A stretch of DNA of 64,000 bases from Octopus bimaculoides (lineage: Eukaryota), in assembly GCF_001194135.2 (NCBI RefSeq), contig NC_068985.1, forward strand, positions 25,528,796-25,592,795, in the 5' to 3' direction. How positions within the stretch are numbered: the stretch's first letter is position 1; the number at the start of each line of letters is the position of its first letter. A model generated the notes under the pieces. The model did not search any database and was not told where the DNA came from. It saw only the letters and a list, made by a program, of their open reading frames with translations. This document shows positions 56 to 61,280 of the stretch, piece by piece. A program made the translations under genes and the position numbers.

Positions 56-232
56 CTTTAGGGCTCTATGAGTAGCTCTGGCAACAAACAGTTGTGTATT
101 TACAGCGAAAGAATCATCGATGGTCACATCATTAGGTGGTGGAGAGGTAAAGAAAGGTTTCAGAGTAGGTATCACATTAATGGTAACAATAGTTTTGGCA
201 GTTTTGGTTCCATCAGTAACTTCGACATCAAA
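56..232 (-). CDS. cadherin exon A18 (degenerate Ca motifs)
   Basis: [59 protein letters not shown]; cag/gtaag; 177 nt. Confidence 0.85.

Positions 233-61280: not shown

What the first reader, a model, noticed from the sequence alone, without database searches (positions are those of the whole stretch)
56..61280. Giant cadherin built from a strictly repeated two-exon, all-phase-0 module
Seen: 18 A and 17 B exons alternate without exception. All 34 introns are phase 0 and sit at the same two positions in every repeat (just after the A-x-D-x-D motif and just before the F strand). Known: clustered protocadherins, including octopus ones, encode their ECs in one large exon, and Fat/Dachsous have no such regular per-domain intron pair. 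Very long cadherins (42 and 77 ECs, sucker-enriched) have been reported from Octopus bimaculoides; I recall this and cannot confirm this locus is one of them. Inference: the ectodomain grew by tandem duplication of an A+B cassette. Skipping any adjacent B+A or A+B pair removes one repeat in frame and leaves a chimeric but complete EC, so ectodomain length could be tuned by splicing.
Basis: partly seen in the sequence, partly recalled or inferred. Interest (0 to 1): 0.78.

Follow-up and report, generated by a model that had tools for sequence, protein, structure and literature searches.

The report
Octopus giant cadherin, internal exon array
The window holds 37 internal exons (EC repeats 33-51 of about 76) of the known giant Octopus bimaculoides cadherin; the strict two-exon, phase-0 module is real but ancient and shared across molluscs, and nothing supports splicing-tuned length.

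Summary
On the minus strand, 56..61280 holds 37 exons (19 A, 18 B), not 35. They alternate strictly, all have AG/GT sites, and all 36 introns are phase 0 at two fixed positions. All nine N-gaps in the span are intronic. The 1944-aa peptide equals residues 3490-5433 of XP_052824186.1 (O. bimaculoides LOC106874390, 7919 aa, about 76 ECs), so this is very probably the published 77-EC cadherin.

The module is not an octopus novelty. Oyster, ark clam and two gastropod relatives have introns at the same two sites, whereas Lingula Dachsous and Nematostella "cadherin-23" do not. Sixteen window repeats match oyster repeats in order (p=2e-4), and no repeats are recently duplicated.

New here:
- Two EC classes alternate (period 2, p about 1e-4). 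This is specific to the family.
- Most linkers lack canonical Ca2+ ligands.
- Relatives end in a domain resembling the PCDH15/CDH23 membrane-adjacent domain, then a TM helix and a conserved tail ending TT[ILMV]L.

Length tuning by splicing is arithmetically possible but has no support. The cellular function proposed is inferred only.

The parts
61089..61280 (-). exon 1 (A1, 64 aa; strands F-G of one EC, linker, strands A-B of the next, ends DxDxx)
   Evidence: AG/GT sites, phase 0. Equals P0226 residues 3490-3553.
59604..59732 (-). exon 2 (B1, 43 aa; strands C-D-E)
   Evidence: P0226 3554-3596.
58471..58656 (-). exon 3 (A2, 62 aa)
   Evidence: P0226 3597-3658. Last exon of old model P0002.
57219..57359 (-). 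exon 4 (B2, 47 aa)
   Evidence: P0226 3659-3705. Old model P0001 starts inside it.
55695..55883 (-). exon 5 (A3, 63 aa)
   Evidence: P0226 3706-3768.
54326..54457 (-). exon 6 (B3, 44 aa)
   Evidence: P0226 3769-3812.
52007..52195 (-). exon 7 (A4, 63 aa)
   Evidence: P0226 3813-3875.
49102..49239 (-). exon 8 (B4, 46 aa)
   Evidence: P0226 3876-3921. Absent from the old models.
48398..48586 (-). exon 9 (A5, 63 aa)
   Evidence: P0226 3922-3984.
46788..46919 (-). exon 10 (B5, 44 aa)
   Evidence: P0226 3985-4028.
46066..46251 (-). exon 11 (A6, 62 aa)
   Evidence: P0226 4029-4090.
45175..45306 (-). exon 12 (B6, 44 aa)
   Evidence: P0226 4091-4134.
42647..42826 (-). exon 13 (A7, 60 aa; DxD lost)
   Evidence: P0226 4135-4194.
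39590..39721 (-). exon 14 (B7, 44 aa)
   Evidence: P0226 4195-4238.
37684..37866 (-). exon 15 (A8, 61 aa)
   Evidence: P0226 4239-4299.
34420..34545 (-). exon 16 (B8, 42 aa)
   Evidence: P0226 4300-4341. Absent from the old models.
34067..34255 (-). exon 17 (A9, 63 aa)
   Evidence: P0226 4342-4404. Preceded by the shortest intron (164 nt).
31719..31850 (-). exon 18 (B9, 44 aa)
   Evidence: P0226 4405-4448.
29788..29961 (-). exon 19 (A10, 58 aa; DxD lost)
   Evidence: P0226 4449-4506.
28441..28569 (-). exon 20 (B10, 43 aa)
   Evidence: P0226 4507-4549. Absent from the old models.
26248..26427 (-). exon 21 (A11, 60 aa)
   Evidence: Acceptor corrected. P0226 4550-4609.
24889..25035 (-). exon 22 (B11, 49 aa; donor as in RefSeq)
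   Evidence: P0226 4610-4658.
23039..23224 (-). exon 23 (A12, 62 aa)
   Evidence: P0226 4659-4720.
21670..21798 (-). exon 24 (B12, 43 aa)
   Evidence: P0226 4721-4763.
20083..20259 (-). exon 25 (A13, 59 aa; DxD lost)
   Evidence: P0226 4764-4822.
19199..19324 (-). exon 26 (B13, 42 aa)
   Evidence: P0226 4823-4864.
16672..16845 (-). exon 27 (A14, 58 aa)
   Evidence: P0226 4865-4922.
15483..15617 (-). exon 28 (B14, 45 aa)
   Evidence: P0226 4923-4967.
13945..14133 (-). exon 29 (A15, 63 aa)
   Evidence: P0226 4968-5030.
13295..13420 (-). exon 30 (B15, 42 aa)
   Evidence: P0226 5031-5072. Absent from the old models.
12243..12425 (-). exon 31 (A16, 61 aa)
   Evidence: P0226 5073-5133.
11554..11667 (-). 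exon 32 (B16, 38 aa; shortest B exon)
   Evidence: P0226 5134-5171.
8590..8772 (-). exon 33 (A17, 61 aa)
   Evidence: P0226 5172-5232.
7139..7264 (-). exon 34 (B17, 42 aa)
   Evidence: P0226 5233-5274.
3184..3363 (-). exon 35 (A18, 60 aa)
   Evidence: P0226 5275-5334.
441..560 (-). exon 36 (B18, 40 aa)
   Evidence: P0226 5335-5374.
56..232 (-). exon 37 (A19, 59 aa; the gene continues 3' beyond the window start)
   Evidence: P0226 5375-5433. A GT donor follows at 55-54, and the next residues in P0226 (QQIVYELTGD...) are not in the window.

Best explanation
The window is an internal 61-kb stretch of Octopus bimaculoides LOC106874390, the giant cadherin with about 76 ECs in its 7919-aa RefSeq product. 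This is very probably the published 77-EC, sucker-enriched cadherin. The window encodes EC units 33-51.

Shown:
- Each EC-length repeat is split by two phase-0 introns at fixed places. One lies in the B-C loop right after DxD. The other lies 2-3 residues into strand F.
- The same two sites are used in the related genes of an oyster, an ark clam and two gastropods.
- Sixteen window repeats are orthologous, in order, to oyster repeats.
- From about unit 10 onward, repeats alternate between two sequence classes.

Inferred:
- The array arose before the molluscan classes diverged, by amplification of a unit that already carried both introns. That unit was most likely a two-EC, four-exon super-unit. 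Since then it has been kept as an ordered array of individually conserved domains that is spliced constitutively.
- As a protein it is most likely a type-I membrane cadherin with an ectodomain of roughly 0.3 micrometre. That length assumes about 4.5 nm per EC, a figure from my own knowledge.
- The N-terminal region (units 1-9, which show no two-class alternation and hold the four canonical Ca2+-type linkers) would form the binding tip.
- The long shaft of alternating ECs has linkers that lack most canonical Ca2+ ligands.
- By orthology with the Babylonia and Potamilus proteins and an O. sinensis tail gene, a membrane-adjacent domain like that of PCDH15/CDH23 follows, then one TM helix and a conserved tail ending in a PDZ-ligand-like TT[ILMV]L.
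- This architecture suggests a long extracellular tether or link between apical membrane specialisations, comparable in principle to tip-link or intermicrovillar cadherins. That functional step is inference only.
For: Exon model and phases.

Identity with XP_052824186.1, residues 3490-5433, with all 37 exons contiguous.

Size: 74 HMM units over index 1-75. The 77-EC sucker-enriched cadherin of Wang & Ragsdale 2017 is cited in PMC6339937.

Intron sites in unit-HMM coordinates:
- window: 18+18 of 36
- Magallana gigas: 23+24 of 50
- Babylonia: 20+21 of 43
- Gigantopelta: 12+14 of 27
- Tegillarca: 14+15 of 49
- Lingula Dachsous: 0+1 of 19
- Nematostella cadherin-23: 2+4 of 66

Unit orthology of octopus with oyster: 10 of 16 diagonal entries rank first among 23, p=2e-4 under parity-preserving permutation.

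Tiling of P0226 by mollusc fragments on single diagonals.

No recent duplication: mean unit identity 29%, maximum 46%, no excess similarity between neighbours, no exon-exon DNA hits.

Period 2: p=1e-4 in the window. In the 5000 permutations for whole P0226, none reached the observed value, and units 1-9 show no signal. It is present in P0002, P0003, P0008 and P0009 and absent from Dachsous, CDH23, Fat4 and DCHS2.

Fold: two ECs at pLDDT 95.8, with cadherin structures as the top matches.

Linker motifs.

C-terminal module: TM and tail; found only in molluscs by single-sequence and profile searches; weak sequence match to the CDH23 EC25-MAD28 structure 8tri; top nine Foldseek hits are PCDH15 EC11-MAD12 and CDH23 EC25-MAD28.
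Against: - P0226 ends at ...NPNQVRFGFTFL with no TM helix. I had no DNA 3' of the window, so the link between this octopus gene and the TM/tail module rests on unit collinearity with the Babylonia protein (five reciprocal-best pairs on one diagonal).
- No cadherin exons lie within 10 kb upstream of the O. sinensis tail gene.
- The membrane-adjacent-domain model has pLDDT 51, so the fold match is only suggestive.
- If Babylonia collinearity holds to the end, the octopus gene would have about 85 ECs rather than 77. Either the published count or my projection is off.
- The oyster gene has no further A/B exons within 10 kb downstream, and only one weak A-like hit (E=6e-4) inside the neighbouring upstream cadherin gene. 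A single giant gene in oyster is therefore not shown.
- Expression and function were not tested here.
- Wang & Ragsdale 2017 and Albertin et al. 2015 could not be read. I cannot say whether the exon module or the alternation has already been described.
Confidence: 0.85

Rival explanations
1. The ectodomain grew in the octopus or cephalopod lineage by tandem duplication of a single A+B cassette, and its length is tuned by skipping adjacent exon pairs in frame.
For: All introns are phase 0, so any exon skip stays in frame. The repeats clearly share a common origin. The older models P0001 and P0002 omit some exons. Potamilus P0014 joins N-terminal-like units (1-9) to C-terminal-like units and the TM in 3387 aa, which could be read as a massive in-frame skip.
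Against: - The same intron sites occur in bivalves and gastropods.
- Repeats are orthologous unit by unit with oyster.
- Within-octopus repeat similarity is no higher than octopus-oyster similarity: best-partner mean 140 against 147.
- No exon-exon DNA similarity is detectable.
- Period-2 alternation means a one-pair skip would join unlike classes.
- The look-up returned one RefSeq product for the locus, with no isoform label.
- Oyster isoforms X1 and X2 differ by a 3' terminal exon, not by cassettes.
- The exons missing from the old models are mostly single B exons, whose loss would delete strands C-E of one EC. This is typical of prediction misses.
- P0014 is an unverified hypothetical-protein model and may be a paralogue.
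Confidence: 0.07
2. It is simply the mollusc orthologue of a conventional long cadherin (Fat4, Dachsous or CDH23), as the automatic names of its relatives suggest, and its gene structure is the ordinary one for that family.
For: NCBI names for relatives include "protocadherin Fat 4(-like)", "cadherin-23-like" and "protocadherin-15-like". There is generic EC similarity to these families at up to about 650 bits. The membrane-proximal region weakly resembles CDH23 MAD28 and PCDH15 MAD12. The tail ends like a PDZ ligand, as I recall the CDH23 and PCDH15 tails do.
Against: - No EGF or laminin-G domains in any relative, which excludes Fat and CELSR.
- No cadherin cytoplasmic domain was found.
- Mollusc relatives score 1000-1290 bits, against 650 or less for Fat4, Dachsous and CDH23.
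- Lingula Dachsous and Nematostella cadherin-23 have irregular exons and mixed phases.
- Period-2 alternation is absent from those families.
- The C-terminal module retrieves only molluscs, even with a profile.
- There are about 76 or more ECs; from memory, CDH23 and Dachsous have 27 and Fat4 has 34.
Confidence: 0.07
3. The regular array is an artefact: collapsed or duplicated assembly around the N-gaps, or a decaying pseudogene array.
For: There are eleven N-gaps in the window, nine of them inside the span. The introns are repeat-rich.
Against: - The ORF runs 1944 aa with no stop.
- All 74 splice sites are canonical.
- Every repeat is different from the others, at most 46% identical.
- The same peptide occurs in a RefSeq product predicted from a chromosome-scale contig (127 Mb).
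- The repeats have positional orthologues in oyster.
Confidence: 0.01

Closest known systems
The 77-EC cadherin of Octopus bimaculoides (Wang & Ragsdale 2017, as cited in PMC6339937); RefSeq LOC106874390 / XP_052824186.1, "uncharacterized protein"
   Same: The window peptide is identical to residues 3490-5433 of the 7919-aa product, which has about 76 ECs. The species is the same.
   Different: Nothing differs at the sequence level except the one-residue exon-22 boundary that I then adopted. I could not read the original papers, so I do not know whether they describe the exon module, the two-class alternation or the mollusc-wide conservation.
Mollusc proteins auto-named "protocadherin Fat 4(-like)" or "cadherin-23-like" (Magallana gigas XP_065921688, Babylonia areolata, Gigantopelta aegis, Haliotis, Pomacea, Mytilus, Tegillarca)
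   Same: The same two phase-0 intron sites per repeat, the same two-class alternation in several of them, unit-by-unit collinearity with the octopus protein, and non-canonical RNxxxPxF linkers.
   Different: They are listed as fragments of 3400 aa or less that tile different parts of the octopus protein. Some exon pairs are fused in Gigantopelta and Tegillarca. Whether each species has one giant gene or several shorter ones is not settled.
CDH23 and PCDH15 (tip-link cadherins) and other cadherin-related proteins with a membrane-adjacent domain
   Same: A long all-EC ectodomain. The membrane-proximal region has a predicted beta-alpha-beta-beta-alpha-beta order, and its best structural matches are PCDH15 EC11-MAD12 and CDH23 EC25-MAD28. 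There is a single TM helix and a C-terminal T-x-L that looks like a PDZ ligand. Some linkers are non-canonical.
   Different: About 76 or more ECs; from memory, CDH23 has 27 and PCDH15 has 11. It has a two-class alternating array and a regular two-intron module that the one CDH23-type gene tested (Nematostella) lacks. The tail motif EPPSFLREYETQSLxMYVPPDE was found only in molluscs. No unit collinearity was seen, although the control for that test failed.
Fat and Dachsous giant cadherins
   Same: Very long arrays of ECs, with partly non-canonical linkers.
   Different: No EGF or laminin-G domains. Lingula Dachsous has 20 irregular exons with phases 12/5/2 for phases 1/0/2. No period-2 alternation. 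The cytoplasmic tail is different.
Clustered protocadherins of octopus and vertebrates
   Same: Cadherin-superfamily ectodomains. From memory (the Wang & Ragsdale abstract), both gene types are discussed as octopus novelties.
   Different: From memory, protocadherins have 6-7 ECs encoded in one large exon. Here each EC-length repeat is cut by two introns, and there are about 76 ECs.

Membership tests
Cadherin superfamily | Tandem extracellular cadherin (EC) domains with the seven-strand fold | tested here: met
   Pfam PF00028 at E=3e-158 with 15 stretches. AlphaFold two-EC model at pLDDT 95.8 with 7+7 strands. Top Foldseek hits are cadherin EC pairs at E about 1e-18.
Cadherin superfamily | Canonical inter-EC Ca2+-binding motifs (XEX, DRE, DxNDNxPxF, DxD) | tested here: inconclusive
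   In the window, DxD is kept in 15 of 18 units. Asp at -6 is present in 1 of 18 and Asp/Glu at -3 in 3 of 18, and LDRE is replaced by SLxx. Canonical DxNDxxP occurs only at four N-terminal linkers of P0226. Ca2+ binding itself cannot be tested here.
O. bimaculoides LOC106874390 (giant, about 77-EC cadherin) | Sequence identity with the gene product | tested here: met
   All 37 exon peptides are found contiguously at residues 3490-5433 of XP_052824186.1.
   36 of 36 window introns. In the four relatives, 26 of 27, 41 of 43, 47 of 50 and 29 of 49 introns fall at these sites.
   p=1e-4 in the window. None of 5000 permutations reached the observed value in P0226. Shared with P0002, P0003, P0008 and P0009.
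   The 3' end of the octopus gene is outside the window, and P0226 ends without a TM helix. The module exists in O. sinensis as a separate small gene and in Babylonia on the same model as the A/B array.
Fat / CELSR | EGF and laminin-G domains (plus a 7TM region for CELSR) after the ECs | tested here: not met
   No such Pfam domains in the window peptide or in P0002, P0003, P0004 and P0006. The complete Babylonia C-terminus goes from ECs to a non-repeat region and a single TM helix.
Dachsous | Orthology or collinearity of ECs, and a gene structure like Dachsous | tested here: not met
   Mollusc relatives score about 2x higher than any Dachsous. Lingula Dachsous has 1 of 19 introns at the module sites. 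No period 2. No unit collinearity, although the sensitivity of that test is doubtful.
CDH23 | 27 ECs + MAD28 + TM + PDZ-binding tail, and orthology to CDH23 | tested here: inconclusive
   MAD-like resemblance and a T-x-L C-terminus. Against this: about 76 ECs, a Nematostella cadherin-23 gene structure that differs, a C-terminal profile that retrieves no CDH23, and an uninformative collinearity test whose control failed. Vertebrate CDH23 introns could not be examined because the gene was too long for the tool.
Clustered protocadherins | 6-7 ECs encoded by one large variable exon | tested here: not met
   37 exons for about 18.5 ECs in the window.

The most novel reading that the evidence does not exclude
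Molluscs as a whole share one extremely long (about 76 to 85 EC) link cadherin that is distantly allied to CDH23 and PCDH15. Its shaft is a Ca2+-poor array of two alternating EC classes, that is, a two-domain structural super-repeat analogous to titin super-repeats. Its uniformly phase-0, two-introns-per-repeat gene structure is exploited to make in-frame isoforms of different length. One possible example is a form of about 27 ECs, like the Potamilus model, that joins the N-terminal tip directly to the membrane-proximal part.
Probability: 0.12. Interest if true: 0.7.

Novelty: new member of a known kind. Interest (0 to 1): 0.42.

Why it matters
The gene itself is already on record: a reported 77-EC octopus cadherin and an existing RefSeq model. 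The main outcome is therefore a correction. What looked like an octopus novelty with splice-tunable length is an ancient, positionally conserved molluscan gene.

Three observations may interest cadherin and cephalopod biologists, and I found none of them in the literature I could search:
1. The array is a two-EC super-repeat with two alternating domain classes, specific to this family.
2. Nearly all of its linkers lack canonical Ca2+ ligands, while the N-terminal tip keeps them.
3. The family ends in a PCDH15/CDH23-like membrane-adjacent region and a PDZ-ligand-like tail conserved from bivalves to octopus.

Together these make a concrete and testable proposal: the sucker-enriched giant cadherin is a long membrane-anchored tether.

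The results also flag annotation problems. Current mollusc annotations name pieces of this gene "Fat 4", "cadherin-23" or "protocadherin-15", and appear to split it into separate models in several species.

Tried and rejected
- Exact look-ups of P0001, P0004 and P0052 found no recorded gene. I got around this by using cluster members.
- My first greedy spliced mapper failed on the Tegillarca model. An anchor-chaining mapper replaced it.
- Oyster isoforms were checked for cassette skipping. X2 differs from X1 by an alternative 3' terminal exon. Comparisons with older-assembly isoforms were unreliable because exact-word mapping failed on polymorphic exons.
- The 10-kb flanks of the oyster gene showed no further A/B exons downstream, and only one weak A-like hit inside the neighbouring upstream gene.
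- The 10 kb upstream of the O. sinensis tail gene held no cadherin or MAD exons.
- Unit collinearity with CDH23 and Dachsous gave no signal, but the vertebrate-cnidarian CDH23 control also failed, so the test is uninformative.
- Pfam found nothing in the membrane-proximal region or tail.
- The AlphaFold model of that region was poor, at pLDDT 51.
- Literature searches for a per-domain intron pattern in cadherins found nothing relevant. Albertin 2015 and Wang & Ragsdale 2017 are not held.
- An earlier suspicion that the protein collection excludes sequences above about 3400 aa was wrong. P0226 (7919 aa) is present, but only as a cluster member.
- The exon preceding A1 (peptide ...DLTKSTVNEFT) was not found in 61281-64000. 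It lies in a gap or beyond the window.
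Full report
**1. What is in the window**

The window has 34% G+C and carries 11 runs of N. Six-frame ORF listing and HMMs built from seed peptides found cadherin-like open segments only on the minus strand. They fall into two alternating types.

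I fixed the boundaries by requiring in-frame AG and GT sites. The result is 37 exons between 56 and 61280:
- 19 A exons of 58-64 aa. Each holds strands F-G of one EC, the linker, and strands A-B of the next EC, and ends in DxDxx.
- 18 B exons of 38-49 aa, each holding strands C-D-E.

The spliced ORF has no stop codon. All exon lengths are multiples of three, so all 36 introns (164-3775 nt, median about 1.35 kb) are phase 0. Most donors are GTAAGT, and acceptors follow pyrimidine tracts. Pfam Cadherin matches at E=3e-158.

**2. Gaps**

All nine N-runs inside the span lie in introns, and the flanking exons join in frame. A RefSeq protein predicted from a chromosome-scale contig contains the 37 exon peptides contiguously, so no exon is hidden in a gap.

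**3. Identity**

The best database hit, P0001, has exon peptides identical to mine but skips several exons. It continues 3' of the window. P0002 ends with window exons 1-3 exactly, and P0001 begins inside exon 4, so an early annotation split one gene in two.

The cluster of P0002 contains XP_052824186.1, "uncharacterized protein LOC106874390 [Octopus bimaculoides]", 7919 aa. My peptide equals its residues 3490-5433. The one difference is a single Val, where RefSeq uses a donor 3 nt downstream at exon 22; I adopted that boundary.

The 7919-aa product has 74 detectable units over index 1-75, or about 76 ECs. This fits the 77-EC, sucker-enriched cadherin of Wang & Ragsdale 2017 as cited in PMC6339937. 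The window covers units 33-51. The product ends ...NPNQVRFGFTFL without a TM helix, so it may be 3'-incomplete.

**4. Is the module special to octopus?**

It is not. I fetched genomic loci for relatives and mapped each protein onto its DNA. I then placed every intron in the coordinates of an HMM of the octopus A+B unit.

| Gene | Introns at site 1 + site 2 | Total introns |
|---|---|---|
| Window | 18 + 18 | 36 |
| Magallana gigas "protocadherin Fat 4 X1" | 23 + 24 | 50 |
| Babylonia areolata "Fat 4-like" | 20 + 21 | 43 |
| Gigantopelta aegis "cadherin-23-like" | 12 + 14 | 27 |
| Tegillarca granosa (noisy model) | 14 + 15 | 49 |
| Lingula Dachsous | 0 + 1 | 19 |
| Nematostella "cadherin-23 X1" | 2 + 4 | 66 |

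Site 1 is the A|B boundary at HMM position 62/63 and site 2 is the B|A boundary at 106/1, both phase 0. In Gigantopelta the remaining repeats have fused exon pairs. Lingula Dachsous has 12, 5 and 2 introns in phases 1, 0 and 2. Nematostella has 37, 18 and 11 in phases 0, 1 and 2.

Its own refutation criterion, a conventional orthologue with the same pattern across Bilateria, is not met. The pattern is nonetheless shared across three molluscan classes. Vertebrate CDH23 could not be tested.

**5. Age of the array**

Repeats in the window average 29% identity, with a maximum of 46%. Neighbouring repeats are not more alike than distant ones, and no exon-exon DNA similarity is detectable.

Against the oyster protein, one diagonal dominates. 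Window units 3-18 pair with oyster units 1-16, and 10 of the 16 rank first among 23 oyster units (p=2e-4 under permutations that preserve parity).

In P0226 numbering, fragments from other molluscs tile the protein on single diagonals:
- Potamilus: units 1-9
- Tegillarca: 3-8
- Gigantopelta: 13-32
- Pomacea: 27-51
- Oyster: 34-58
- Mytilus: 41-67
- Haliotis: 53-76
- Babylonia: 60 to about 85, followed by its TM helix

The ordered array therefore predates the split of cephalopods, gastropods and bivalves. If the Babylonia collinearity runs to the end, the complete octopus gene would have about 85 ECs. That does not agree with the published 77 and remains open.

**6. A period of two**

Unit similarity is higher at even distances than at odd ones. 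Parity permutation gives p=1e-4 for units, 2.5e-4 for A exons and 1.5e-3 for B exons. Periods 3, 5 and 6 are not significant, and period 4 reaches p=0.03, as expected for a multiple of two.

The two classes differ, for example, in the motif after the linker: P.F.N.PY against P.F.RQ.Y. The alternation persists to offsets of about 28 in the composite built from P0002, the window peptide and the P0001 tail. In full-length P0226 it is absent from units 1-9 and strongest in units 50-75. In that part, only every second linker is of the RNxxxPxF type.

It is shared by P0002, Babylonia, Pomacea and Haliotis. It is absent from Dachsous, CDH23, Fat4 and DCHS2. The unit that was amplified, or is now constrained, is thus two ECs and four exons.

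**7. Protein features**

A two-EC segment folds at pLDDT 95.8 and pTM 0.81. Intron site 1 lies in the B-C loop after DxD, and site 2 lies 2-3 residues into strand F. Foldseek returns cadherin EC pairs. The highest TM-scores are to PCDH15 EC8-10, a structure which, from memory, contains a bent Ca2+-free linker.

In the window, DxD is kept in 15 of 18 units, but the acidic residues of DxNDN and DRE are almost all missing. Canonical DxNDxxP occurs at only four N-terminal linkers of P0226.

**8. The C-terminal end of the family**

Babylonia P0003 carries 42 alternating exons, then a 716-aa exon holding further ECs, a non-repeat region, one TM helix and a tail of about 80 aa.

The non-repeat region, TM helix and tail are strongly conserved in gastropods and bivalves: NRFVLVL...IIE, VWW.DDPWAAL-TM, EPPSFLREYETQSLxMYVPPDE, and a C-terminus of TT[ILMV]L. 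Single-sequence and profile searches retrieve only molluscs. One hit is O. sinensis LOC118763608, a 141-aa TM-plus-tail protein ending TTIL.

The region aligns weakly with the start of MAD28 in the CDH23 structure 8tri. A low-confidence model (pLDDT 51) has beta-alpha-beta-beta-alpha-beta order. Its top nine structural hits are PCDH15 EC11-MAD12 and CDH23 EC25-MAD28.

This supports an architecture like that of tip-link cadherins. It does not establish orthology. There are no EGF or laminin-G domains, and the collinearity test against CDH23 was uninformative.

**9. The splicing idea**

In-frame skipping is guaranteed by arithmetic, but I found no evidence that it happens:
- The look-up returned one RefSeq product for the octopus locus.
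- Oyster isoforms differ by an alternative 3' terminal exon.
- The exons omitted from the older octopus models are mostly single B exons, whose loss would remove strands C-E of one EC.
- A one-pair skip would put two unlike EC classes out of register.

The Potamilus model joins N-terminal-like units to C-terminal-like units in 3387 aa. It is the only hint of a short form, and it is unverified.

**10. Verdict**

The gene is already known, and the module is ancient and mollusc-wide. The duplication inference needs re-dating and a larger unit, and the splicing inference is unsupported.

The two-class super-repeat, the Ca2+-poor shaft and the MAD-like region with a PDZ-ligand-like C-terminus are modestly new descriptive points. 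They give a testable tether model. The functional part of that model is inference.

Noticed in passing
window 28996-29503, 31119-31377, 42882-43414, 43912-44218, 48737-48980, 53138-53374 and others: A dispersed repeat family of about 200-280 bp, with copies 70-82% identical to one another, is scattered through the introns in both orientations, often next to poly-N-codon (AAT/ATT) microsatellites. It is probably a SINE-like element. No copy overlaps an exon.
   Followed up: partly
window 5857-6528 (+) and 57769-58187 (-): Two copies, 68% identical and in inverted orientation, of an ORF fragment with motifs such as ...SETWAVT...RRL.WYGHV...GRGRPRKTW. From memory this resembles the C-terminal part of non-LTR retrotransposon ORF2 products. 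Pfam gave no significant hit.
   Followed up: partly
window 23432-23816 and 35659-36042: A 385-bp intronic repeat pair at 93.5% identity is the most similar duplicate in the window. It overlaps ORFs of 85-156 aa on the minus strand that have no Pfam match. It is probably a young transposable-element copy.
   Followed up: partly
window 61281-64000: The exon that precedes A1 in the RefSeq protein (peptide ...KYFDVEQSNGNIFVAGDLTKSTVNEFT) is not found here. It must lie in one of the two gaps (61784-62009, 62983-63522) or beyond the window end.
   Followed up: yes
L006/L007 (Magallana gigas OY970751.1, about 18.00-18.05 Mb): Oyster isoform X2 replaces exons 46-51 of X1 with a single alternative 53-aa terminal exon (L006 40150-40308). 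Neither isoform has a TM helix. A separate cadherin gene ends about 4.7 kb upstream on the same strand.
   Followed up: partly
P0014 (Potamilus streckersoni CHS0354_039207, 3387 aa): This model joins units orthologous to octopus units 1-9 to units orthologous to the Babylonia C-terminal array, followed by the MAD-like region, TM helix and tail. Its size is close to that of CDH23. It could be a paralogue, a short isoform or a model that skipped about 50 ECs.
   Followed up: partly
L008 (Octopus sinensis CM016863.1, LOC118763608): The TM-plus-tail module is annotated as an independent 141-aa protein with four exons spread over 10.9 kb. Its first codon, Met-Lys-Thr-Lys-Ser-Phe-Val-Trp-Trp, sits where other species have ...TKS(Y/H)VWW inside a longer exon. 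This suggests a truncated annotation of a larger gene.
   Followed up: partly
P0227 (XP_014768716.1, 867 aa, O. bimaculoides): An older RefSeq fragment of the same gene cluster is named "protocadherin-15-like". Pieces of this one gene thus carry at least four different automatic names across databases: Fat 4, cadherin-23-like, protocadherin-15-like and uncharacterized.
   Followed up: no
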